Below, piece after piece: positions 4,895-41,780 of a stretch of 64,000 nt of DNA. Made by a program: the position numbers and the translations under genes. Position 1 is the first letter of the stretch. Every line of letters starts with the position of its first letter. The notes beneath the pieces were generated by a model. It was not told where the DNA came from. It saw nothing but the letters and a program-made list of their open reading frames with translations, and did no database searches. Where the stretch lies: positions 167,789 through 231,788 of IMG/VR virus record IMGVR_UViG_3300028608_000006. One strand, given 5' to 3'.

Positions 4895-6296
4895 CCTTCT
4901 TCCCCTTCTTATCGGTATCAGCGATGAAGATCTTTGGACTGATACCGGAGATAGCCTTTTGGATACCGGCCATCAGTTTGGTGTGAGCAGCCAGTTCGAA
5001 CTTAACGTCCTTCAGCTTCTCTTTACCGGTTTTGACCTTGTCTTGGACTTTGGCCTTTTTAGCCTTCGCCACGTCCTTGTTGCTTTCGTCACCGGTGGTA
5101 TCGCTGGACGCGGTCTTGATCTCAGCCACAGCCTTTTGAGCGTCGGTGATCTCAGCGTTCAGTTTACCGCCAGACGTAGCCTCTTTGGACATGAACCCCA
5201 TCAGGGCGTCGATGACCTTAGGGGCGTCGCTTGGGGTACGCAGCTGACTGACCAACCCTTTCAGCTTACCCGAAGGATCAACTTCAGCCATCAGGTTGGT
5301 AATACCTTCCCGGGCTTTGTCGTTGATCACCGCGGCCGTGTCCTTCATCGACTGCAAGGCCTTCTTGTTGTTATCAGCCATCAACTCAGCCGACTTAACC
5401 TTTTCTTCAGGCTTGCTGGTGGTGAAGAGGTCTTTGATAGCACCCAAGGATGCTGTCAGTGCGCTCCAAGCTTTCTCGCCCATGTCTTTGATCGCGTCAA
5501 AGATAGGACCTTCCTGACCGGCATAACCTTCCAGACGAATGTTGTTAGCATTCGCCACGCCAATGAAGTATTCCTTAGCAGGACTCTCGGTCCCGTTCAG
5601 GAAGTGCTCCATCCCCTCGATAATCATGAGGGGGTGTTCCAGCGCGCAGCCGCACAGACAGTCGGTGTCTTTACGACATTCCAACCCGTCCACATCGAAG
5701 TCAGGATCAGGGATCTCTTCCAGATCATCGGGGTCAACCTCTGGGTACTCTGGCAACCCAGCCTCGGCGCCGATCCGGCAGGCCACGAAGCAATCCGTCA
5801 ATTCAAAGACCTTTTGAATGTACTCGAGTTGGCGGACATAACCACGCAGGATGGCAACCGGGAACTCTTCCTCCCCGGCATTAAGCTGTGCCAGTTTACC
5901 CAGATTGAAACGCACGTCATCCATGAAGAGTGCGAGCGAACTGGTCTGGTCCATGGGACCGCCTTTGTTCCCCATTCCACTGATGGTCATCGCCAATGTC
6001 GTTGGGCGTTCGTAGTAAGCGTTATGCATGTCATTAAAGACATCTAAGAGGTAAAGGTTCAGCGCACTGTTAACCTTCATCTCCGCCGCATCGTAATACG
6101 AGAAGTTCTTCTCGATACAAGCCAGAACATTGTTGAGAAGCGAGCGAACCTTCTTCTCATCCATAGGCTCGTCACCACTGTAACTACCCAGAGACTCGAT
6201 GATCCGTTTCAGGATCGGGTGATCGTCCTTGGAGAACTCGAACATCTTGGTGATCAACATCATCCCCAAGAGAGACAACTGGAGGTAAAGACTCAT
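4887..6296 (-). CDS. Head (internal/ejected) protein with acidic propeptide
   Basis: Several G-x-E sites (GAE, GLE, GME, GTE, GQE) followed by the helix GPIFDAIKDMGEKAW and a basic coiled coil. Confidence 0.6.
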   Translation of the reverse strand: MSLYLQLSLLGMMLITKMFEFSKDDHPILKRIIESLGSYSGDEPMDEKKVRSLLNNVLACIEKNFSYYDAAEMKVNSALNLYLLDVFNDMHNAYYERPTTLAMTISGMGNKGGPMDQTSSLALFMDDVRFNLGKLAQLNAGEEEFPVAILRGYVRQLEYIQKVFELTDCFVACRIGAEAGLPEYPEVDPDDLEEIPDPDFDVDGLECRKDTDCLCGCALEHPLMIIEGMEHFLNGTESPAKEYFIGVANANNIRLEGYAGQEGPIFDAIKDMGEKAWSALTASLGAIKDLFTTSKPEEKVKSAELMADNNKKALQSMKDTAAVINDKAREGITNLMAEVDPSGKLKGLVSQLRTPSDAPKVIDALMGFMSKEATSGGKLNAEITDAQKAVAEIKTASSDTTGDESNKDVAKAKKAKVQDKVKTGKEKLKDVKFELAAHTKLMAGIQKAISGISPKIFIADTDKKGKKDE

Positions 6297-6796: not shown

Positions 6797-7844
6797 GAGA
6801 CTTACCCTTGTTGACAGTGGCGTTCAGGATGGACAACGAAGCGAAAAGACCTTTGAAGATGGTCAGCTCCAGCAACTTAATGTTGGCCATGCCGTTACGC
6901 ATGATGGTTTGAAGGTCACTGATCGTGCTAACGTAGTGAGAGTTCTTGTCGGAGTCAGCCTTCTTGGTCTTCTCCAGCTCTTTGTTCAGAGCCTTAATGA
7001 AATCCTTTTCCAGCTTGACGGTGAACTCCATCAGGTCATCAGCGTTGTTCATCAACGCCTTGTGTTCCTTGAACAACCGCAAGACTTCCGTTTGGTTGGT
7101 ACGGAAGGTTGGGTTTTTAGACTGGTTAGGTGGGGACGGTACTTCGTGCAACTTACCGTTCTGATCCATCTTGAAGTCGTGGGAAGCAAAGAACGGAGTG
7201 GAGACGTTGAACCCTTTAATGCTCAGAGTCCCCATCCCCAAAGAGACAATCTTGTTGATCGTTTCTTTGAGTTGTGCAGGACCGTTGTTGGTAGGGGCGG
7301 TCATGTCGGTCAGAGACTTACACGCACCCTGAAGGATACCGACGTACAGAGCCACGCGCTTCATGGCTTCACCGCAATCGTGGAACGCCGAGGACATCCA
7401 AGACAGACTAGCTTCCGGTTTGGTCAGCTTATCGTAGATGTCCATGTAGTCGAGGGGATAATGGATCTCCCCGGTGTTGATGCCGTTCTTCTCGATGTCG
7501 AGTTCCAGGGACTTGGTCTTGCGGCTGACCGCTTCTTTCTTACCGGTAAAGAAAGAGAACAGCCACTTGAAGAAATCTTTGACGGCCTGGATAACAACCT
7601 CAACGCCCTTCTTAACTTTGTCGAGGAAACCCTCGTTGCCCGATACAACAGAAACTTCTGGCAGGGAGACGTGAGAGAAGATCGCTTGATAGAACTCTTC
7701 GTTACCACTTACGCGGTCGTACTCTTTGGAGAGTTCAAACTTGGTGTCTTCGTCGATCACATCGCTGTAACCTTTTTGGTCCGCGTTGTATTCTTCCAAC
7801 AACGTCGGGGTGTTGATAAAACGTGGACTATCAGTAATGGACAT
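6786..7844 (-). CDS. Head protein, phiKZ gp93-type paralog family
   Basis: SGNE/GFLDKVKKGVEVVIQAVKDFFKWLFSFF: cleavage site followed by an amphipathic helix. Confidence 0.7.
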   Translation of the reverse strand: MSITDSPRFINTPTLLEEYNADQKGYSDVIDEDTKFELSKEYDRVSGNEEFYQAIFSHVSLPEVSVVSGNEGFLDKVKKGVEVVIQAVKDFFKWLFSFFTGKKEAVSRKTKSLELDIEKNGINTGEIHYPLDYMDIYDKLTKPEASLSWMSSAFHDCGEAMKRVALYVGILQGACKSLTDMTAPTNNGPAQLKETINKIVSLGMGTLSIKGFNVSTPFFASHDFKMDQNGKLHEVPSPPNQSKNPTFRTNQTEVLRLFKEHKALMNNADDLMEFTVKLEKDFIKALNKELEKTKKADSDKNSHYVSTISDLQTIMRNGMANIKLLELTIFKGLFASLSILNATVNKGKSHAA

Positions 7845-7916
7845 AAGGAAGCCCCTTGTCAGTGGTTAATAGAACGTGCCTATAGCATCCCCTAAATATC
7901 AAAATGCAGACATAAG

Positions 7917-7947
7917 GCTATCGCCCGGGATTGCCCCGGGCGATAGC
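7917..7947 (-). terminator. Intrinsic terminator-like hairpin
   Basis: Perfect 13-bp stem gctatcgcccggg / cccgggcgatagc just after the 415-aa gene. Confidence 0.75.
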
Positions 7948-7978
7948 ACTCATTTACGTCGTGCGCTAACCGCGAGGG

Positions 7979-9226
7979 TTAGACGTGAGCTGCAACGGCG
8001 TCCAGGGTCCAGCCGGCGCTACGGATCACTTGCTTGTTGACGGCCTGAGCGATCGACGACGAAGTCGCGAACACGGAACGTACAACCTGGATCTGAGCGT
8101 TGACTTCTTCAGCCTTTTCCTTGTCGTCCGCTTTCAGGACGTTCAGGGAGCCGATGACCTGGTCACGCTGCGACTTCGAGAAGGCAGCTGCGACTTTGTC
8201 GTTGCGGATGGCGGTAACGGTTGCTTTGACTTTGCCCAGGGCAGCAGTCAGAGCGCCTTTGTCAGCCTTGGCAGCAACTTCGCCGCTGGTCAGCTTGGAG
8301 GTGTCGCCGGTGCCGAAGAAGATCTTGATCGAGCGAGCCATTTCAGCTGCTTCTTTCAGATCTTTCGCCAGGCCGTCTTTCATCTCGGCGTGAACGCGAA
8401 CGCCAGCCGACATGCCGATCAGGGTCTTCTTGTCGCCTTCGCTCTTCTCGCCGGCGTTCACGTCGGACTTGGCGTCCTTCTTGAGTGCGGCCAGCAGGGA
8501 AGCGTAAGCGCTGTTGAAGGACGACAGATCGACCTTGGCAGCCGACTTGGCGATACCAGCGAAAGTAGCCAGGGCGCCTTTGGTGGCAGTCCAGCCTTCA
8601 GGGTCTTTGTTCAGACCGCCTTTCTCGTAGTCGAACAGGACGTTCCAGCCGCCCAGCTTGATCTTTTCCTTGACCTTCTCGGCCGCGGTGACGCGAGTGA
8701 CCAGTTGGTCATGGCGACGGCTCAGCTTTTCAGCGGCGTTGAACAGGCCGACGAAGAAGTTGATCACGGTGTTGAAGATGTGCTTGATGACTTCGATGGC
8801 TTTCTTGGCGTAACCTTTCACGGTTTCCATGAAGCCTTCCATGCCGCTGCGAGCCATGATCTGAGCGGTGGCCGCATCGGACATGGATTCAACGCCGCAA
8901 CGCTCGATGGAAGCGCCGCCCAGCTTGGTGTTCAGCTTGGCCGCACGGTTGTACATGCTGGCGAAAGCGGTGGAGTTGAACTGGCCGGAGCTGATCAGGC
9001 ATTCGAGGCCTTCAACCACTTCCTGGATTTCTTCGACGGCTTCGTCCTGCTGCTTGACTTCTTCACGCAGCTCTTCGATTTCCTGGCCTTGTTGCTCCAG
9101 GACTACCTGAACTTCGGCGACTTCAGCGCGAACCGAATCTTCAGCACCGGCTTCGATAACTACGTTGTCGGCAGCGCCGCCCATTTCCAGTTCTTCGAAA
9201 CCCTTGTAGCGATCAAGAATGTTCAT
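7979..9226 (-). CDS. Abundant head (inner body/ejected) protein, gp93-type family
   Basis: Glu-rich propeptide, GME/GFMETVKGYAKKAIEVIKHIFNTVINFF, strong codon bias. Confidence 0.75.
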   Translation of the reverse strand: MNILDRYKGFEELEMGGAADNVVIEAGAEDSVRAEVAEVQVVLEQQGQEIEELREEVKQQDEAVEEIQEVVEGLECLISSGQFNSTAFASMYNRAAKLNTKLGGASIERCGVESMSDAATAQIMARSGMEGFMETVKGYAKKAIEVIKHIFNTVINFFVGLFNAAEKLSRRHDQLVTRVTAAEKVKEKIKLGGWNVLFDYEKGGLNKDPEGWTATKGALATFAGIAKSAAKVDLSSFNSAYASLLAALKKDAKSDVNAGEKSEGDKKTLIGMSAGVRVHAEMKDGLAKDLKEAAEMARSIKIFFGTGDTSKLTSGEVAAKADKGALTAALGKVKATVTAIRNDKVAAAFSKSQRDQVIGSLNVLKADDKEKAEEVNAQIQVVRSVFATSSSIAQAVNKQVIRSAGWTLDAVAAHV

Positions 9227-35056: not shown

Positions 35057-37360
35057 CTACTGGAGTGCGCAGTTAGAGTCAATCACCTTAAACGTTTTCT
35101 TCTTCGCCTCAAAGGCGACTTCACGTTTGCGGAAGTACTCTTTATGCTTAGGCTGGCTAGCACACACCCCGAATACGAACCGTGGGGTGATGCGGTTGTC
35201 GAATGTCTTCAACGCCTTGTCACGTAAACGCCCAATCATTTGTTTGTTGCGTTGAGTCGAACCGACCGTATGCATACAGAGCACAGTTACTAAACCATCA
35301 ATGTCCTTACCCGTTCCGCAACTACCAGGTGTCGTAATGACCACCTCGTGTTTCATGTACTTCAACTTATCGGCGTCTTTACCTTTGGTATCCTCGCCGT
35401 GGAAGGTGACGATGTCCATGCCGGGGTATTCCTTAAGGAACATCTCGAGCATAGCCTCGCACATGCTGACCCTGGAGAAGAAGAACAGACACTTAGTGCC
35501 CTCCTCTCGGCATTCGAGGTAATACTCCTCGAACATCTTCTTGGCCACTTCAAAGTAGAAGTTGGTGACCGTCCGATTGTTCAGAATGCTCTGTTCCCAG
35601 GTTAGGTCATTGTAACTACCGAACTGCTGGGTCTTCAGGTTATAACGTCGCGGGTTGATGTCGTACAGATAAGCGACAATGTCGATGTAGTTCTCAGGCT
35701 CCGGTTCCTTAAGCCGGATGTGAATTGGGAAGAGGATCCGATAGATCTTGTTAATGAACGGATCATCGCCAGACAGAGTTGCAGACAACACAACCAGCTT
35801 GGGGAAGTTACCATACATCAACGAAATGCAGACCTGGTGAATCGCCTCGTGACCTTCGTCAATGATCCTGAGACCGCACTGGAGGCTCTCAAAGATCTTG
35901 TCTAGGCTCGGAGTCTTGGGATCCTTCTTCTCGTTCCTGAAGTGCACGTCAATGCGTGTCATCGGCACAATGATGACCTTCGGATCGATCTCACCCCTCA
36001 GCATCACTTCCTGCAACAAGCACAGGTCCTGTTCCCACACCAAGACATCGGCAGGTTGCAGGTCGATGATGTCACCCAAGGCTTTAATCCAAGTGGTGAT
36101 GTACCGAGGTTGAATCGTAATCAGGGTTCGCTTGCCCATCAACAACATTGTCCGAAGGCCCATGTAGGTGTTGTGCGTAACGAGGTAGTCCTTGATCACA
36201 AAGCACTTTGATTCGTGCTCCACCGAGATGCAGGTGGTTTCAACTGGTCGATCGATCTCAATCCGATTAATCCGCAACGCCAGATCACGGTTGTCGTGTT
36301 CCCACATCGCTTCCACCTTTTCTTGAAAGGTGAACAAGACATGTGGGGTCCGGTGGGTAATCACAACGTAATTATCACCATCAGAGTAATGGGCTTTTGC
36401 AACACCCCCTACACTCCACACCAGATCACGAACCATCTTGGCGCTAGTACCGTAGTCGGAGCGATAGATGATTGACCCATCGGCCTGTGGCTCACCTGTA
36501 GCGTCCAACAACCCACGAAGCAACCCCATGCGCTGAGAGTGAGAACCCTCGAGGTACTTCTCGGTCAGGAACCGATCTGTTTGCCCGATCAGGTAGGCGT
36601 CGATAATGTCGCCGCGATCAGGATTGCGTTCACTGGCCGTTAAAGGAATGCGCCAGACTTTCTCTGGGCTGTCCACTAACTCTTGGGTGGTCTTAACCTC
36701 CCATTTTGACCAGCCATCCGCTCTGACTTCCCACTGGTGCTCAGGACACGCCACAACCGTCCTGCCGTCCTCGAAGGTCAGCTTGTACGTTGGTGTCACG
36801 CCTTGAGGGAAAACCCCTGTGACGTACGTGTGAGAGCCGTCAGGTGCCATGACCAGATCGTTCATCTTGACCTGTCCGATGGGCTTCCAACCTTTAGCTG
36901 TTCTGACCGGAGTACTGTTGGCCAGCGCTTTACCGTAACCTGTGGAGGCGTTGTTAACCTTCACAGCACCCGGAGCCAATTGGTAGTTAACCCACTCATC
37001 CTGACCGGGACGGGTGTTCTCGTAACCAGGACGAAACTTAAATCGAACGTCCTTGCCAACCAATTCCGGTTCAGTTACCAGCTCAACCCGAGACGGGTTA
37101 TAGCCTTTATACTGAGCGAACGCGATGAACTCTTTTAACAAACTTGCGGGGAGACGGTATTCACTCTTGTCAAAGTTCGACCGAGCAAACACATGAGTCA
37201 CTTCCATCTTTGTTCTACCGGTACCAGGAATTGGCACTTTCCCCATTTTGTAAAGGTTGGCCCGGCAGAAAGGCAGTATTACTTGTGCGGCGAACTCACC
37301 GTAGAACCCAAAGATTCGGAGGTAGTTATGCGCTCGCGAGATAGTGGCAACGTGGCGCAT
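35057..37360 (-). CDS. SF2 DExH helicase (phiKZ gp75-like), intein-containing
   Basis: Walker A STGYGK/T split by the intein; IIDEGHE, LSAT, TPGSCGTGKDI, QMIGRLR. Confidence 0.9.
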   Translation of the reverse strand: MRHVATISRAHNYLRIFGFYGEFAAQVILPFCRANLYKMGKVPIPGTGRTKMEVTHVFARSNFDKSEYRLPASLLKEFIAFAQYKGYNPSRVELVTEPELVGKDVRFKFRPGYENTRPGQDEWVNYQLAPGAVKVNNASTGYGKALANSTPVRTAKGWKPIGQVKMNDLVMAPDGSHTYVTGVFPQGVTPTYKLTFEDGRTVVACPEHQWEVRADGWSKWEVKTTQELVDSPEKVWRIPLTASERNPDRGDIIDAYLIGQTDRFLTEKYLEGSHSQRMGLLRGLLDATGEPQADGSIIYRSDYGTSAKMVRDLVWSVGGVAKAHYSDGDNYVVITHRTPHVLFTFQEKVEAMWEHDNRDLALRINRIEIDRPVETTCISVEHESKCFVIKDYLVTHNTYMGLRTMLLMGKRTLITIQPRYITTWIKALGDIIDLQPADVLVWEQDLCLLQEVMLRGEIDPKVIIVPMTRIDVHFRNEKKDPKTPSLDKIFESLQCGLRIIDEGHEAIHQVCISLMYGNFPKLVVLSATLSGDDPFINKIYRILFPIHIRLKEPEPENYIDIVAYLYDINPRRYNLKTQQFGSYNDLTWEQSILNNRTVTNFYFEVAKKMFEEYYLECREEGTKCLFFFSRVSMCEAMLEMFLKEYPGMDIVTFHGEDTKGKDADKLKYMKHEVVITTPGSCGTGKDIDGLVTVLCMHTVGSTQRNKQMIGRLRDKALKTFDNRITPRFVFGVCASQPKHKEYFRKREVAFEAKKKTFKVIDSNCALQ
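36170..36928 (-). mobile_element. 253-aa class 3 intein with degenerate LAGLIDADG domain
   Basis: Starts with Ala (ALANSTPV); block B CPEHQW, block F TTCISV, block G LVTHN with +1 Thr; one LLRGLLDATG motif. Confidence 0.9.
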
Positions 37361-37385
37361 TGTAGCAGCCTCTTAACAAAATAAA

Positions 37386-37407
37386 CGAGAACCCCGAAGG
37401 GTTCCCG
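37386..37407 (-). terminator. Intrinsic terminator with cUUCGg tetraloop
   Basis: Minus strand cgggaaccc-TTCG-gggttctcg followed by tttattttg. Confidence 0.8.
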
Positions 37408-37419
37408 CTATCGGGTGTG

Positions 37420-39435
37420 TTAAGACGCACCTAACGCCCAGAAGCTCTCAAGTACGGAACCTTGACGGTCCATGGTCATGAAAGTACGCGGGTCGTTAAG
37501 AACGTTCTGTTGTTTCTCAAAGATTAACAAACCGCCTCCGCCCCGGCTGGTGATGCAGTTAATGAAACTGGAGAAGTACTTATCCCCAGAACCGTTAGCC
37601 ATTGCGAAGGACAGGTTGTTTGGATCTCTGGCCAGACAGCAATACAGTAGAGCTTCTACGTGCACTGCGTTAATACCTTTGATCTCCTGGTTAATAAGTG
37701 TCCAGAACTCAGACAATACTTCACCAAAGATCTTCGGCGTTACCACTTGGTTCCGCCATGCGGTATTGCGCTTGTTGAAGGTCATGAAGTTTTCCACACG
37801 AGCCCGGTGCATGTCCAAATCCTCACGAGTATAAGGAAGGGCAAACATCGGAGCCAGCGTGTTCCAATCAGACAGGTCGATGGAGATGAAGCGCTTATCC
37901 ACCGTGTTCCAACCTTTATCCAGCACGAAGCGCAGGAAGTCCAAGGAGAAACGAGCATTACGCGACGACACCGACGTGATAGCCGAATGCTGCTGCGTGG
38001 TCTTGCCACCCATCATGATGTCTTCCACTTGGTAGCGGAAGGTAACGTCAGAGAAGTACGGGAGCTTATCCAGCCCAACGTCGTCCAATACATCGAGCGA
38101 CTTCAGGTCAGACAGGTCCTTAACAATCGACGACTTCAGAATCAGCTCGGAACCCGGTACGCAGATCTCAGCCTTCAGGAAGATTTCATCCCCGTTGGTA
38201 TAAATGATATCTTTGTCCCGGACGTGAGGCACAAACTTCCGCGAGGTTGCGTTGCGGATGTAGTGCTTAGTACTGAGCATTTTCTGCCCCATCGGGTTAC
38301 ATAAGGTAGTACCCGAGTACATTCCCACGTTCGCGTCTTTCATCATCATGACGTTAAACGGGATGGTCGACTTCATTTTGCCGTAGCAGCGACCGCACGG
38401 CTGGCCAGGGTTGTGAGAGTTACAGAACGCCATGCTGCGGAAGGTAACGACGTCACCGGTCTTGATCGTGTCGACGTTGCGTTGATCAATCAGAACCGAT
38501 GAACCGTCCGCTAGGATGATGTACTTGCCCATCAAGGACAAAGCCATCTCCATGTTGAGGATCTTCATAGGAACGCCCACAGTCGTCCCACAGTCGTTCA
38601 TGTGCAAGATGCTGTGTAACGGCGCCGACAGCAAGTGAATCTTGCGGTGGAACCACTCAGCGTCCTTCAGACCCTTACCGTTGTTGATCAGCGACTTACC
38701 GGATGAGTTACGTTCACCCAAGGAGTCAGCCAGGTTGGTGATGCCGTGAGCATACGGCACGTTAACCGAGTTCGGGAAGATGGTGTTGTTCAAGTCAAAC
38801 ACCGAACCACGAATGATCGTCGTCTGGAATGCTTGGTTGATACTCACGCCACCTGTCCGCGCCAGCAGTGCCATGGTGTTGGTATTCAGACTCTCGGCTT
38901 CACGCAGATAGTTACTGAACACTTTCTCGCCATCGTCAATGCTGATCTCGTGCGCCAAGATACGGTCACGGATATCCATGATGCCGACGTCTTCCATCAG
39001 CTCGGCCACAGACTCAGCCGTCGCCGAAATTACCGACGCCTCACTCATCACCACAATCATGTTGTTGAGTTTGGTTTGCCAGATGTGGATCAGTCGCTTG
39101 ATACTGTCAGTCTCAACAGGATCATCGATCTCCGGCATAACGCTTTCCAGAATCCAGTTCACCGGAATGGCCAGAGTATCGTCGCTGTACACCACCTCCT
39201 TATGTTCTGGATTCTTGTTGGACGGGACCAGCTCGTCAATCGAGTAAGCCACGTTGTTGTACTTGCGGTGAACGATCAAGCCTTGCCATGTCAGCATCAT
39301 CGCGAACAGGCAGGACATTGTCTTCTTACCTTCGTCGTCCACCACCTCTACTGCTTGGCGGTGACCACGACAACGAAGGATATCCGCTTCAGTGAGGTTG
39401 GCCCATTCACGCAGGCTAATTTGCATCATGCCCAT
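37420..39435 (-). CDS. Non-virion RNA polymerase beta' C-terminal subunit (phiKZ gp74-like)
   Basis: EWFHRKIHLL...NDCGT; zinc site RSMAFC...CGRCYG. Confidence 0.85.
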   Translation of the reverse strand: MGMMQISLREWANLTEADILRCRGHRQAVEVVDDEGKKTMSCLFAMMLTWQGLIVHRKYNNVAYSIDELVPSNKNPEHKEVVYSDDTLAIPVNWILESVMPEIDDPVETDSIKRLIHIWQTKLNNMIVVMSEASVISATAESVAELMEDVGIMDIRDRILAHEISIDDGEKVFSNYLREAESLNTNTMALLARTGGVSINQAFQTTIIRGSVFDLNNTIFPNSVNVPYAHGITNLADSLGERNSSGKSLINNGKGLKDAEWFHRKIHLLSAPLHSILHMNDCGTTVGVPMKILNMEMALSLMGKYIILADGSSVLIDQRNVDTIKTGDVVTFRSMAFCNSHNPGQPCGRCYGKMKSTIPFNVMMMKDANVGMYSGTTLCNPMGQKMLSTKHYIRNATSRKFVPHVRDKDIIYTNGDEIFLKAEICVPGSELILKSSIVKDLSDLKSLDVLDDVGLDKLPYFSDVTFRYQVEDIMMGGKTTQQHSAITSVSSRNARFSLDFLRFVLDKGWNTVDKRFISIDLSDWNTLAPMFALPYTREDLDMHRARVENFMTFNKRNTAWRNQVVTPKIFGEVLSEFWTLINQEIKGINAVHVEALLYCCLARDPNNLSFAMANGSGDKYFSSFINCITSRGGGGLLIFEKQQNVLNDPRTFMTMDRQGSVLESFWALGAS

Positions 39436-41780
39436 TACAAGCCCCCGTAAATATTGTCAGTACCGCCGGTAACCCCGGTCATGTGCAGGTCTTCACCGAA
39501 TGCTACCGGATTAGGCAAGCGCTTACCCGAGTAACGTGGTTCGGCAGGTGGAGCTGGTTCCGGTTCAGGCTTATTAAGACCGCTCTCAGCCAACTCGAGT
39601 GCCACGCCGCTCAACTGGCTCATATCGAGCAGGTTGTTGATTGGCTCCATGGTTCGGTCAGTCGGGAGTTCATGACGGATGGTGTAACCCGAGTCAGACA
39701 ACATACTTGCAGCCATCTTCACGGCCCGGTTGTTCTGATACTCGTCTGGCTTCACAATCTGATCGATGTTAAACGGATCGTCTGCCCGGATAATACGGCG
39801 CACCATCACTTTACGCAGATCCGGTGAATACGCCATGGCCAATTGCTTAGCCGTTTCCTGACCACCGTGTTGGCTGGTGCGCAGACGACCTTCCGTTTCA
39901 CCCGTGTTACGGTTGCCCTGATCTCGCAGCCAGCTGGAGTACTTGCTGCTGTCGTTCAGTTTAGCCGGCATACCGAACAGGTTGGACTTAGGCAATGCCT
40001 GAGCCGACATATCCGTACCGAACTTATCCAGCATCATGAAGTGCTGGTTACTGATCAGGATTGGGTTCACGGTCTCCACGTACTCACCCAGCGAGTTCAT
40101 GAAGGTTGCCTTCTGCGGTTTGAAGGGATACTTCGCGCGCAGGGCGTTGATGATCGCCACACCATACAACCGGGTGTTACTGCGAACATGGATAGAGATC
40201 ATCTTGTCGCAGCAGTGGTCGACGTAATCCTTAATGTCGTCCGCATTGGTGTAGGTCGCCCGAACGATCTCACCGAACTCCGGGAACCCAGTTTCGCAGA
40301 ACTCGAGGATCATTGCGTAAGCTTCAGCGTACTGACCCAGGTTACGAAGCAACCGCGCTTCTTTCTGGATGTTAACGTTGATGTAGTTGATACTGAGCTC
40401 CATCAACATCGAGTAGATCTGACGACGGAACGCTGGCGTGTTGTTGATGATGACTTCCGCACGAGTACCGTCCGCATAGGTCGGCGCCATGTGGTCCTCG
40501 ATGATGCTCACCGCAACACCTTTGTCGCCGTTCAACCCTGCGAACTTGAACTTGATCTTGCCAGGCACGATTTCGCGCAGCAGGATATTAATGTTCCAGT
40601 CCTTCAACTTGACCCGCTTGATCCCCCGGCTGAGTGGGTTGATCTTGCCAGTGTTGGTATTACGGGTGTAGTTGCCGTATGCCGAGTTAATGAAGGTATC
40701 CAGTTCCAGCGTGATCGGGATGTCATTACCACGGTTGTTCGCGATACGACGTTCGTACCAACGAATCACGTTGTTGTGCATCTCGTTCTGCTTCTTCTCA
40801 TAACGCTCGAGAAGAATGTTGTGTGGCTGCTCGATGTAATCCGTACCGCGATTGTTAGCGCGGTTCTTCATGCGGTCACTCAACACTTCGACCGACATTA
40901 CTTCCGAGTTGATCGGAGCGTAAAACAGTTGATCGTAGGTCAGGTCCGGGATACGCAAAGCTTTACGTGTCAACGACACCAAGGAGTTCTCGGTGATGCG
41001 ACGACGGAAGCCCATGACGATGCCGTCTTCACGAATGCGCTGACCCGATTGTGGGAACGGGCAGTCATTACCTTGTGCATCTTTGTAAAGCATCAACGGA
41101 ACGAATTCTTCCTCGTTCCACTGGAAACCACGTTCGTGCTTGAACATGCACTTCAAACGTTCTTCAGCGTACGATCGAGTCAGCTGAATTGCATCCTCCT
41201 CGGTAACGTGGCTGGAGATCGCTGCAACGCGGGTGTTCATGCCGAAGCACCATTCGCCGCTTTCGCTGATCCGTGGGGACTTGGCGAAGACCGTGCCTTT
41301 CGGGAAGGTGGCCAGTGGCGACATCAGCTTGCGCATCACGTCTTTGTCGTAGACAAACTCGAACCCCACATATGTGTTCTGTGTGTTGTACCGGGGGAGT
41401 TCAAGAATGTCGTACATGTTCTTTTCGTCATTCTTATAAATGACGTACACTTTGTTCCAGGCGTCAGTCATCTCACGCGGGTCTTGGCTCCCCACGAAGA
41501 ACACTTCTTCCACTTGCATGTTGGCTGGCGCTACAATCTGGCGAGCAGTTTGAGCGTAACCTTGTTTCCACTCAAAGCCAGTCACCATCATGCGCTCATC
41601 GGCACCCGAGGTAACTACCGACTTCGGAATCATGTTGCCGGCCATGTACAGACGACCAGCAGAAGCCGACCACGGGAACAGAATCAGGTTGTTACTGACA
41701 CCCACCAGCGCAGGATGGATTTGGTTCGGTCCGCAGATGTATTTATATTTAACATCTTGCTGAGTCTCGTTGTCACTCAT
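39435..41780 (-). CDS. Non-virion RNA polymerase beta C-terminal subunit (phiKZ gp71-73-like)
   Basis: KFAGLNGDKG (GDK...KG motif), EVIINNTPAFRR, MMLDK, DQGNRNTGETE; uninterrupted 781 aa. Confidence 0.85.
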   Translation of the reverse strand: MSDNETQQDVKYKYICGPNQIHPALVGVSNNLILFPWSASAGRLYMAGNMIPKSVVTSGADERMMVTGFEWKQGYAQTARQIVAPANMQVEEVFFVGSQDPREMTDAWNKVYVIYKNDEKNMYDILELPRYNTQNTYVGFEFVYDKDVMRKLMSPLATFPKGTVFAKSPRISESGEWCFGMNTRVAAISSHVTEEDAIQLTRSYAEERLKCMFKHERGFQWNEEEFVPLMLYKDAQGNDCPFPQSGQRIREDGIVMGFRRRITENSLVSLTRKALRIPDLTYDQLFYAPINSEVMSVEVLSDRMKNRANNRGTDYIEQPHNILLERYEKKQNEMHNNVIRWYERRIANNRGNDIPITLELDTFINSAYGNYTRNTNTGKINPLSRGIKRVKLKDWNINILLREIVPGKIKFKFAGLNGDKGVAVSIIEDHMAPTYADGTRAEVIINNTPAFRRQIYSMLMELSINYINVNIQKEARLLRNLGQYAEAYAMILEFCETGFPEFGEIVRATYTNADDIKDYVDHCCDKMISIHVRSNTRLYGVAIINALRAKYPFKPQKATFMNSLGEYVETVNPILISNQHFMMLDKFGTDMSAQALPKSNLFGMPAKLNDSSKYSSWLRDQGNRNTGETEGRLRTSQHGGQETAKQLAMAYSPDLRKVMVRRIIRADDPFNIDQIVKPDEYQNNRAVKMAASMLSDSGYTIRHELPTDRTMEPINNLLDMSQLSGVALELAESGLNKPEPEPAPPAEPRYSGKRLPNPVAFGEDLHMTGVTGGTDNIYGGL

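What the first reader, a model, noticed from the sequence alone, without database searches (positions are those of the whole stretch)
36170..36928. Ala-start class 3 intein with a decayed endonuclease in the helicase P-loop
Seen: GK|ALANSTPV...HN|T, with Trp in block B (EHQW), Cys at F4 (TTCISV) and Thr in block G (VTHN). Known: this WCT triplet with no N-terminal nucleophile defines class 3 splicing through an internal Cys thioester, as in mycobacterial and phage DnaB-type inteins. The first LAGLIDADG block is truncated (DAYLIGQTDRF), so homing is probably lost. Helicase activity strictly requires splicing, so it might be a redox or metal switch.
Basis: partly seen in the sequence, partly recalled or inferred. 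Interest (0 to 1): 0.65.

Follow-up and report, generated by a model that had tools for sequence, protein, structure and literature searches.

The report
Class 3 intein in phage helicase
A jumbo phage's only copy of a conserved DNA helicase is interrupted, exactly inside its ATP-binding loop, by a 253-residue self-splicing protein element of the rare "class 3" type whose DNA-cutting domain is dead but still kept by selection. It is a well-supported new member of a known kind, not a new kind of thing.

Summary
Window 36170..36928 (- strand) encodes a 253-aa intein between Lys144 and Thr398 of a 767-aa SF2 helicase (35057..37360, -) of an uncultivated phiKZ-like jumbo phage. Intein-less alleles read GK|T without a gap.

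All sequence signatures of class 3 inteins are met: Ala1, His-B10, Trp-B12, Cys-F4, Thr-G5, His-Asn end and Thr+1. The AlphaFold model (pLDDT 94.6) overlays the class 3 M. smegmatis DnaB intein (Z 20.9, rmsd 1.6 Å) and PI-SceI (Z 21.9).

Compared with full-length relatives, about 75-100 residues were lost right after the start of the first LAGLIDADG motif. The second motif lacks its catalytic Asp. So the endonuclease is dead.

- The remnant domain is not decaying; its dN/dS is 0.02-0.12.
- Intein and extein trees conflict strongly, so the intein module has moved between phage lineages after the truncation.

The site is an intein hotspot. 54 of 122 homologous helicases carry a WCT intein there, with eight different first residues.

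The redox or zinc switch idea is untested. The partner residues of the mycobacterial switch are not conserved. Splicing itself is inferred, not shown.

The parts
35057..37360 (-). Precursor gene: 767-aa SF2 (DEAD/ResIII-type) DNA helicase with the intein, single copy in the phage genome
   Evidence: ORF. It matches phrog_16 DNA helicase at 3.5e-43 and Helicase_C. Intein-less homologs hit PF00270 DEAD above the cut-off from the Walker A motif onward. There is only one copy in the 231,788-bp genome.
36929..37360 (-). N-extein, residues 1-144, ending in the first part of Walker A (STGYGK)
36170..36928 (-). Intein, 253 aa (protein residues 145-397)
   Evidence: Boundaries are fixed by intein-less alleles.
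35060..36169 (-). C-extein, residues 398-767, starting with Thr398, which is the Walker A Thr and the +1 splice nucleophile (codon 36167-36169). The stop codon is 35057-35059.
36890..36928 (-). Block A; residue 1 is Ala (codon 36926-36928), so there is no N-terminal nucleophile
   Evidence: It aligns with ALALDTP... of the class 3 Msm DnaB intein.
36725..36766 (-). Block B: Cys61 (B7), His64 (B10), Trp66 (B12)
   Evidence: His and Trp are invariant in 54 of 54 inteins at this site. Cys at B7 is present in 18 of 18 inteins of the AL-type lineage.
36284..36616 (-). Central domain (about intein residues 105-215): a single alpha-beta-beta-alpha-beta-beta-alpha LAGLIDADG-type half-domain, catalytically dead
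   Evidence: Secondary structure and pLDDT of 84-96 are. 251 of the model's 253 residues align to PI-SceI (Z 21.9, rmsd 2.8 Å), so the central domain is included. There was no Pfam LAGLIDADG hit, whereas full-length kin hit PF14528. dN/dS is 0.02-0.12.
36584..36601 (-). Remnant of the first LAGLIDADG motif (block C), DAYLIG, cut off before its acidic residue. The deletion junction lies right after it.
   Evidence: In alignment A3, full-length kin continue as PYLMGVLLGDG plus about 70-95 further residues that are absent here. BLASTP alignments to full-length inteins break at residue 115 and resume at about 118-124.
36491..36532 (-). Second LAGLIDADG motif (block E), degenerate: GLLDATG where full-length kin have GL(L/M)DTDG, so the catalytic Asp is replaced by Thr
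   Evidence: None of the 18 AL-type mini-inteins keeps the D-x-D-G form.
36392..36445 (-). Block H-like helix and strand of the endonuclease remnant
   Evidence: It is conserved in A2 and A3. Gly174 (intein numbering) is invariant in A3.
36194..36244 (-). Block F with Cys233 at F4 (codon 36230-36232), the predicted class 3 nucleophile; also Cys242 and Phe243
   Evidence: Cys is present in 54 of 54 inteins. It aligns with the catalytic Cys118 of Msm DnaBi1.
36170..36190 (-). Block G: Thr251 (G5), His252, Asn253
   Evidence: All three are invariant in 54 of 54 inteins.

Best explanation
This is a splicing-competent class 3 intein inside the Walker A motif of the phage's only copy of a conserved SF2 helicase.

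Inferred mechanism, by homology with inteins studied at the bench:
1. After translation, Cys233 (block F, position 4) attacks the Lys144-Ala145 peptide bond. His64 and Thr251 activate it and Trp66 packs beside it. The N-extein is carried as an internal thioester branch.
2. The N-extein is passed to the hydroxyl of Thr398 (+1).
3. Asn397 cyclises and releases the intein.
4. An O-to-N shift restores the motif GYGKT, and the helicase can then bind ATP.

The intein descends from a full-length LAGLIDADG intein. A deletion removed most of the first endonuclease half, starting just after the opening residues of the first LAGLIDADG motif. The second motif lost its catalytic Asp, so the intein cannot cut DNA itself.

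The remaining half-domain is kept as a folded unit under purifying selection. The likeliest reason is that the precursor must fold and splice; a second function is not excluded.

The intein spread among related jumbo phages by recombination at a site that many inteins, some with intact endonucleases, compete for.

Shown here: position, boundaries, signatures, fold, endonuclease loss, selection, and discordant history. Inferred: splicing, its chemistry, and the need of splicing for helicase activity.
For: - **Boundaries.** Intein-less alleles give exact boundaries.
- **Signatures.** All class 3 signatures as defined in PMC3196547 and PMC5222942 are present: Ala1, Trp-B12, Cys-F4, Thr-G5 and Thr+1. 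Across 54 inteins at this site, Trp, Cys, Thr, His-B10, His and Asn are 54 of 54. Residue 1 is A, G, E, D, F, S, L or M, as expected if residue 1 has no catalytic role.
- **Sequence homology.** The profile matches class 3 Msm DnaBi1 at 3e-17 and MchDnaB-1 at 1e-15, with Cys233 on catalytic Cys118.
- **Structure.** The model has pLDDT 94.6 and pTM 0.90. It matches 6bs8 at Z 20.9, rmsd 1.6 Å over 123 of 125 residues, and PI-SceI at Z 21.9 over 251 of 253 residues.
- **Endonuclease loss.** Full-length kin show what is missing. The catalytic Asp is lost. There is no PF14528 hit here, whereas the full-length kin tested hit it.
- **Selection.** dN/dS of the remnant domain is 0.09, 0.07 and 0.02 in the least saturated pairs, similar to the HINT domain and exteins. 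Amino-acid identity is 58% in the remnant, 67-71% in HINT and 72% in exteins.
- **Single copy.** The helicase occurs once in the genome, and the DEAD domain is recognised only in uninterrupted alleles.
- **Discordant history.** C-extein data reject the pair window+P0002 (AU p 1.6e-4). Intein data reject the pair window+P0006 (AU p 5.7e-11).
- **Turnover.** Intein presence needs at least 32 changes on the extein tree, 25 of them forced by well-supported branches.
Against: - No experiment or proteomic data show the spliced product.
- Grafting W, C and T onto the class 1 gp41-1 intein did not give splicing (PMC7664689). The triplet is therefore a signature, not proof of activity.
- The best sequence match among solved inteins is gp41-1, which is class 1.
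- The clades for the AU tests were chosen after seeing the trees, which inflates their significance.
- The deeper discordance test was borderline (p 0.09 and 0.05).
- dS is near saturation in several pairs.
- Selection on the remnant could reflect only the need to avoid misfolding of an essential precursor.
Confidence: 0.85

Rival explanations
1. The intein is an adaptive conditional switch. Oxidation, or zinc binding at Cys233, stalls splicing and so holds back helicase activity and phage replication until conditions are right, as proposed for the M. smegmatis DnaB intein. This rival is compatible with the main explanation.
For: It shares the class, the Walker A Lys|Ser/Thr site and the catalytic Cys with Msm DnaBi1, whose splicing is reversibly blocked by H2O2 and zinc (PMC6195587, PMC7360933). 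The intein has two further cysteines. Cys61 sits at block B position 7, next to the active site in sequence, and is conserved in 18 of 18 AL-type inteins. Cys242 is present in 11 of 18.
Against: DnaBi1's disulfide partner Cys48 aligns with Thr47 here, and its zinc ligand Tyr128 aligns with Phe243. 68 of 122 homologous helicases work without any intein, and close relatives differ in intein state. That pattern fits a selfish element better than a needed regulator. No model coordinates were available, so Cys-Cys distances could not be measured.
Confidence: 0.15
2. The endonuclease-less intein is mobilised in trans. Full-length inteins at the same site, or free-standing homing endonucleases, cut intein-less helicase alleles during co-infection, and the mini-intein allele is copied in as repair template. 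Plain homologous recombination could do the same. This rival is compatible with the main explanation.
For: Intein and extein trees conflict. P0010 carries a 236-aa AL-type mini-intein and P0051 a 344-aa full-length intein with GLMDTDG, yet their exteins are 94% identical in DNA. All 21 inteins of 300 aa or more at this site keep an intact motif. The phage with the closest intein (88% identity) has an HNH endonuclease gene directly upstream of the helicase.
Against: No co-conversion tract was evident around the junction. All events are old: flanks are at most 94% identical. Repeated loss from an intein-bearing ancestor explains part of the pattern. No cleavage data exist.
Confidence: 0.3
3. The intein is splicing-dead (an intein pseudogene, as in Arthrobacter Arth_1007). 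The helicase is then non-functional, or it works as an unspliced precursor.
For: Splicing is not demonstrated. One annotated class 3-like intein turned out to be inactive (PMC3196547).
Against: Arth_1007 lacks Cys-F4. Here every catalytic residue is invariant across orthologs that are 44-88% identical, and across all 54 inteins at the site. Both exteins and intein are under strong purifying selection. The gene is single copy and conserved across the phage family. The Walker A loop is split by 253 residues.
Confidence: 0.05
4. It splices by another route. One option is class 2-like direct attack of Thr398 on the N-terminal junction. Another is a class 1-like route with an unrecognised nucleophile.
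For: Ala1 also occurs in class 2 inteins (PMC5222942). The nearest solved sequence relative, gp41-1, is class 1. One related intein in IMG/VR starts with Cys while keeping Cys-F4 (L010).
Against: The WCT triplet is complete and invariant. The intein is homologous and superposable on proven class 3 inteins. Residue 1 varies over eight residue types, six of them unable to act as nucleophile.
Confidence: 0.04
5. The central domain is still an active homing endonuclease, for example by dimerising like single-motif LAGLIDADG enzymes.
For: The domain is well folded and strongly conserved. Single-motif LAGLIDADG enzymes that act as homodimers exist (general knowledge, not tested here).
Against: The metal-binding Asp of the one remaining motif is Thr here, and Gly, Asn, Ser, Arg or His in the orthologs. 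There is no Pfam LAGLIDADG match. Half of the DNA-binding saddle is deleted.
Confidence: 0.03

Closest known systems
Mycobacterium smegmatis DnaB intein 1 (Msm DnaBi1 / DnaB-1; PDB 6BS8, 6OWN) and M. chimaera DnaB-1 (6RIX)
   Same: It is class 3 (Ala1, Trp-B12, Cys-F4, Thr-G5). It is inserted in a helicase Walker A loop right after the invariant Lys, with a hydroxyl +1 residue. The HINT fold superposes at Z 20.9, rmsd 1.6 Å and 30% identity.
   Different: The host protein is an SF2 phage helicase, not hexameric DnaB. The +1 residue is Thr, not Ser. This intein keeps a roughly 110-residue dead LAGLIDADG half-domain, whereas DnaBi1 is a 139-aa mini-intein. The redox partner Cys48 and the zinc ligand Tyr128 are not conserved.
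Helicase intein of Pseudomonas phage EL (gene PPEV_gp040, annotated only as 'DNA helicase') and its kin in cultured phiKZ-like phages
   Same: It has the same gene, the same neighbourhood after the split RNA polymerase genes, the same GK|T insertion site, the same WCT signature and a similar size of 248 aa with a degenerate endonuclease.
   Different: It shares only about 35% identity and belongs to another intein lineage, starting with Met and then QPLY.... From memory only, and not verified here: the old InBase registry listed EL inteins. I found no paper in the held library that describes them.
Mycobacteriophage Bethlehem DnaB, Deinococcus radiodurans Snf2 and mycobacteriophage TerL1-a inteins
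   Same: These are phage or helicase class 3 inteins and 'classic' P-loop insertions between the invariant Lys and the nucleophilic Thr (PMC5050341, PMC3196547).
   Different: The host proteins and phage groups differ. I made no direct sequence comparison because their sequences were not returned by any tool.
gp41-1 split intein (6QAZ; WCT-engineered 6RIZ)
   Same: It is the best sequence match among solved structures (5e-24 and 2e-19) and has the same HINT fold at Z 19.
   Different: It is class 1 (Cys1), naturally split, and has no endonuclease domain. Grafting WCT onto it did not give splicing (PMC7664689).
PI-SceI (yeast VMA1 intein homing endonuclease)
   Same: It is the best whole-model structural match: Z 21.9, with 251 of the model's 253 residues aligned, so HINT plus LAGLIDADG-type domain.
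   Different: PI-SceI is a class 1 intein of 454 aa with two complete, active LAGLIDADG halves. Here only one half survives, and it has no catalytic acid.

Membership tests
Intein (HINT-fold protein-splicing element) | In-frame insertion that is exactly absent from otherwise collinear homologs | tested here: met
   GXNNE2 and 68 other homologs join GK directly to T(Y/F)M.
Intein (HINT-fold protein-splicing element) | HINT fold with blocks A, B, F and G; C-terminal His-Asn followed by Cys, Ser or Thr | tested here: met
   The model has pLDDT 94.6. It matches many solved inteins at Z 15-22. The junction reads HN|T.
Intein (HINT-fold protein-splicing element) | Protein splicing actually occurs | not testable with these tools
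   This needs expression with a Western blot or mass spectrometry.
Class 3 intein | No Cys, Ser or Thr at intein position 1 | tested here: met
   Residue 1 is Ala145. 52 of 54 inteins at this site have a non-nucleophile there.
Class 3 intein | Trp at B12, Cys at F4 and Thr at G5 (the WCT triplet) | tested here: met
   These are Trp66, Cys233 and Thr251. The positions were set by profile alignment to Msm DnaBi1. All three are invariant in 54 of 54 inteins. The definition is in PMC3196547 and PMC5222942.
Class 3 intein | Ser or Thr (rarely Cys) at +1 | tested here: met
   The +1 residue is Thr398. The criterion is in PMC5222942.
Class 3 intein | Groups with proven class 3 inteins (the class is reported as monophyletic) | tested here: inconclusive
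   Similarity to Msm and Mch DnaB-1 is strong, but class 1 gp41-1 scores higher. I built no tree that includes the reference class 3 set.
Class 3 intein | Branched intermediate on Cys-F4; splicing abolished by mutating Cys-F4 | not testable with these tools
   This is a bench experiment.
Active LAGLIDADG homing endonuclease | Two LAGLIDADG motifs (or one in a homodimer), each ending in a catalytic Asp or Glu, with a complete DNA-binding saddle | tested here: not met
   The first motif is cut after YLIG, and about 75-100 residues are missing. The second motif reads DATG instead of DTDG. There is no PF14528 hit, whereas the full-length kin tested hit it.
SF2 (DEAD/ResIII-type) helicase host protein, insertion in Walker A | Motif I G-x-G-K-T restored on removal of the insert; RecA-like domains 1 and 2 | tested here: met
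   Intein-less alleles hit PF00270 from the motif I region onward, and also Helicase_C. The window protein hits Helicase_C and phrog_16. I did not build or search the joined extein sequence.
Redox- or zinc-responsive conditional intein of the Msm DnaBi1 type | Regulatory partner residues: Cys48 for the disulfide, Tyr128 hydroxyl for zinc | tested here: not met
   These align with Thr47 and Phe243. The catalytic Cys is present and other cysteines exist, so sensitivity by another route is not excluded.

The most novel reading that the evidence does not exclude
The Walker A site of this helicase in nucleus-forming jumbo phages is a long-running contest between many class 3 intein lineages. In that contest, endonuclease-dead mini-inteins such as this one persist and spread by using the cuts made by full-length inteins or free-standing nucleases at the same site. 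Their dead LAGLIDADG half-domain is kept because it has taken on a new job, for example timing or conditional control of splicing, or DNA or partner binding in the precursor.
Probability: 0.12. Interest if true: 0.6.

Novelty: new member of a known kind. Interest (0 to 1): 0.35.

Why it matters
For annotation, the gene is a helicase with an intein. Related records label it 'terminase' or 'hypothetical', and the DEAD domain is invisible to Pfam until the intein is removed.

For intein biology, the family around it is a natural data set for class 3 chemistry. It holds 54 inteins at one site with Trp, Cys and Thr invariant and eight different first residues. Full-length, half and minimal endonuclease states sit side by side on near-identical exteins.

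It also gives a compact, confidently modelled class 3 intein with Thr+1 that could be tried as a protein-engineering tool.

For phage biology, three ATPases of one jumbo phage (two helicases and the terminase) each need class 3 splicing in their P-loops. That would make replication and packaging depend on one unusual thiol chemistry. This is worth a simple redox or zinc test, although nothing here shows regulation.

Tried and rejected
- **No close cultured relative.** Megablast of the gene against 50,697 phage records gave no match. Protein-level matches are at most 47% identical over the full-length gene.
- **Spurious PDB hits.** The top PDB sequence hits 'Cake' and 'Scone' are designed beta-propeller repeats that match one strand pair (residues 51-88) many times over. 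I discarded them as spurious, and the profile search removed them.
- **Pfam and NCBIfam.** On the intein alone they gave only sub-threshold hits.
- **Literature.** Tori & Perler 2011 (J Bacteriol), which lists class 3 inteins, is not held. Searches for inteins in phage EL, phiKZ-like or jumbo phages found no description of this helicase intein.
- **Deep discordance test.** The test of whether intein data reject monophyly of the extein clade was borderline (p-AU 0.092, and 0.0498 without outgroups). I do not rely on it.
- **Co-conversion tract.** I looked around the junction in the P0010 / P0050 / P0051 trio and saw none.
- **Split helicase in L090.** The helicase of L090 looked N-terminally cut by the HNH gene. 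It is intact from base 5779; the gene caller had merely chosen a later start.
- **Cys-Cys distances.** I could not measure Cys61-Cys233 or Cys242-Cys233 distances, because model coordinates are not exposed.
- **Not done.** I did not make or search a joined (spliced) extein sequence. Exteins were searched apart, by reference. I did not use the read-mapping tools, the large representative-protein search, or any other genetic code.
Full report
**1. What is in the sequence**

Translation gives ...STGYGK, then a 253-residue block that starts ALANSTPV and ends VTHN, then TYMGL. The block is protein residues 145-397, which is window 36928 down to 36170, exactly as reported.

The gene lies directly downstream of two genes for split RNA polymerase beta-type subunits (phrog_3015, phrog_3295). 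It matches phage DNA helicase family phrog_16 and Pfam Helicase_C.

The window is the last 64 kb of a 231,788-bp IMG/VR virus record rated complete. The nearest cultured relatives are phiKZ-like, nucleus-forming jumbo phages: Pseudomonas phage EL (genus Elvirus), Erwinia phages RisingSun and Joad, and vibriophages. All are below 60% protein identity, and there is no DNA-level match.

**2. Is it an intein, and are the boundaries right?**

Yes. The helicase of Pseudomonas phage GXNNE2 is collinear with the window protein but lacks exactly these 253 residues. It reads GK followed at once by TYM.

A search with the C-extein alone, by reference, with candidate lengths set by the whole protein, gave 122 homologous helicases.
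- 68 are about 511 aa and uninterrupted.
- 54 carry an insert at the same point.

The uninterrupted alleles hit Pfam DEAD (PF00270) above its cut-off from the motif I region onward. The window protein does not, because the domain is split. So the insert sits between the Lys and the Thr of Walker A (G-x-G-K-T). The helicase is single copy in the genome.

Exteins were handled separately, by reference.

**3. Homology and fold**

- **Single-sequence search.** The intein matches the gp41-1 intein and the M. smegmatis and M. chimaera DnaB-1 inteins. The higher-ranked 'Cake' and 'Scone' designer propellers are repeat artefacts.
- **Profile search.** A profile of 19 related inteins (A3) gives gp41-1 at 5e-24, Msm DnaBi1 (6BS8) at 3e-17 and MchDnaB-1 at 1e-15. 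Both the N-terminal part and blocks F and G align.
- **Model.** AlphaFold2 on A3 gives mean pLDDT 94.6 and pTM 0.90.
- **Foldseek.** It finds intein homing endonucleases (PI-SceI, TliVMA, PI-PfuI) for the whole model, and class 3 DnaB inteins for the HINT part.
- **Second aligner.** It gives PI-SceI at Z 21.9, rmsd 2.8 Å, with 251 of the model's 253 residues aligned. It gives Msm DnaBi1 at Z 20.9, rmsd 1.6 Å, 123 of 125 residues and 30% identity.

**4. Class 3 membership**

The defining features, from PMC3196547, PMC5050341 and PMC5222942, are:
- no nucleophile at position 1;
- Trp at B12, Cys at F4 and Thr at G5;
- usually Ser or Thr at +1.

Here these are Ala145, Trp66, Cys233, Thr251 and Thr398. 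His64 (B10) and His252-Asn253 are also present. Cys233 aligns with the catalytic Cys118 of Msm DnaBi1. That intein sits at the same place of a Walker A loop (FGVGK|S).

Across all 54 inteins at this helicase site, Trp, Cys, Thr, His-B10, His and Asn are invariant. Residue 1 is A (32), G (7), E (4), D (3), F (3), S (2), L (2) or M (1). This natural variation is what class 3 chemistry predicts and class 1 chemistry forbids.

Caveats:
- Splicing and the block F thioester are inferred.
- Grafting WCT on gp41-1 did not produce splicing (PMC7664689).
- I did not build a tree with the reference class 3 set.

**5. The endonuclease**

In alignment A3, full-length relatives (335-358 aa, with Pfam LAGLIDADG_3 hits) read as follows. 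First comes PYLMGVLLGDG, the first LAGLIDADG motif. Then come about 70-95 residues, then a K-F-I-P block, then GL(L/M)DTDG, the second motif.

The window intein keeps only DAYLIG and then jumps to the region just before the second motif. BLASTP alignments to full-length inteins break at residue 115 and resume at 118-124. The second motif reads GLLDATG, so the catalytic Asp is gone. None of the 18 inteins of this 'AL-type' lineage has it. All 21 inteins of 300 aa or more at the site keep an intact motif, and 32 of 33 shorter ones do not.

What remains (about residues 105-215) is modelled with confidence as one alpha-beta-beta-alpha-beta-beta-alpha unit.

**6. Not decaying**

Against 15 orthologs, the remnant is 58% identical on average, the HINT parts 67-71% and the exteins 72%. 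Nei-Gojobori estimates for the remnant domain give dN/dS of:
- 0.09 for window versus L090 (dS 0.71);
- 0.07 for L091 versus L006 (dS 0.65);
- 0.02 for L007 versus L008 (dS 1.09).

These values are no higher than for HINT or exteins. Only a 19-residue stretch after the domain is relaxed. dS is high, so the values are rough, but neutral decay is excluded.

Relatives with inteins of only about 200 aa at the same site (P0035, P0134, P0139, P0147, L019) show that such a domain is not needed for this intein family in general. So its retention in this lineage calls for an explanation. The simplest is folding of an essential precursor.

**7. History and mobility**

On a tree of the 122 C-exteins, intein presence needs at least 32 changes, 25 of them forced by well-supported branches. 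The AL-type mini-intein needs 8 changes, 5 of them forced. Identical or near-identical C-exteins carry no intein, a mini-intein or a full-length one (P0068, P0069 and P0070; P0050, P0010 and P0051). P0010 and P0051 have exteins 94% identical in DNA but unrelated inteins of 708 and 1032 nt.

For the window itself, the C-extein is closest to P0006 (92%), while the intein is closest to P0002 (88%, against 68% to P0006). C-extein data reject window+P0002 (p-AU 1.6e-4), and intein data reject window+P0006 (p-AU 5.7e-11). These groups were picked after seeing the trees, so the p-values are optimistic, but the likelihood gaps (71 and 139 log units) are large.

A sliding comparison of DNA shows the drop in identity to the P0006-type phages confined to the middle of the intein. 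So the module was exchanged between lineages after the endonuclease was lost. The route could be ordinary recombination or use of other elements' nucleases. I could not tell which.

**8. The 'switch' idea**

Msm DnaBi1 is blocked by a Cys48-Cys118 disulfide, and by zinc bound to Cys118, the Val119 backbone and Tyr128 (PMC6195587, PMC7360933). In the window intein these partners are Thr47 and Phe243.

The intein has its own Cys61 at block B position 7, conserved in 18 of 18 AL-type inteins, and Cys242 in 11 of 18. Any thiol-based catalysis is in principle sensitive to oxidants and thiophilic metals. The idea thus remains a reasonable bench test, but it has no specific support. The patchy distribution of the intein argues for a selfish element rather than a required regulator.

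**9. Verdict**

The main interpretation (class 3 intein, dead endonuclease, Walker A site) is supported by every test that computation allows. 'Decayed', 'homing lost' and 'switch' need the qualifications given above.

It is a new member of a known kind. The same gene in phage EL carries a distantly related intein at the same site, and P-loop class 3 inteins are known in mycobacteria and their phages. What may be worth reporting is the family-level picture (sections 4, 6 and 7), which I did not find described in the held literature.

No reads tools, no large representative search and no alternative genetic code were used.

Noticed in passing
Own genome outside the window: G000:C1:63352-64161 (+), locus L086 ORF 1045-3810: There is a second related intein (32% identity) in the Walker A loop of another helicase (phrog_62). 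The junctions read GSGK|AMPKST ... IVTHN|TFTS. It starts with Ala and has Trp, Cys and Thr in place.
   Followed up: partly
Own genome outside the window: G000:C1:about 7826-8713 (-), locus L087 ORF 1-2493 (-): There is a third related intein, in the terminase large subunit (phrog_2) after RQQGK. It starts with Met and ends IVTHN|TVSV. It is longer, with a block C-like DPYLIGCMINSELTDG. So three P-loop ATPases of this one phage carry class 3-type inteins.
   Followed up: partly
L002:769-3879 (Pseudomonas phage EL, PPEV_gp039): EL's RNA polymerase beta-type subunit gene encodes 1036 aa, against 671 aa for its homolog in the window (37420-39435, -). It contains a stretch homologous to the window intein (tblastn hits at L002 1519-1905 and 2158-2604). 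So EL has an intein in its RNA polymerase that this phage lacks.
   Followed up: partly
L090:4801-5760 (+): The metagenomic phage with the closest intein (88% identity) has a free-standing HNH endonuclease gene (phrog_59) in the gap between the RNA polymerase gene and the helicase gene. That gap is only 60 bp in the window (37361-37419). Weak or faint HNH_3 hits also lie a few genes downstream of the helicase in L091, L094 and L095.
   Followed up: partly
L001, L092 and the records: Public records annotate this helicase inconsistently: 'terminase large subunit, intein-containing' even for an intein-less allele, 'putative terminase', 'DarB-like antirestriction' and 'DOD-type homing endonuclease'.
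   Followed up: no
L010:3076-3804 (+): A related P-loop intein in an IMG/VR contig starts with Cys (CLPLNT...) while keeping Cys at F4 and VTHN|T. It is a possible class 1 / class 3 intermediate form.
   Followed up: no
Window 36203-36205 and 36200-36202 (intein residues 242-243): Across the 54 inteins the pair at F4+9 and F4+10 is Leu-Tyr (35), Cys-Phe (11) or Leu-Phe (7). Where the zinc-binding Tyr of the mycobacterial intein is Phe, the preceding residue is often Cys. The meaning is unknown.
   Followed up: no
Window 39432-39438: The two RNA polymerase subunit ORFs (39435-41780 and 37420-39435, both on the - strand) share base 39435, so the stop and start codons overlap. This fits translational coupling.
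   Followed up: no
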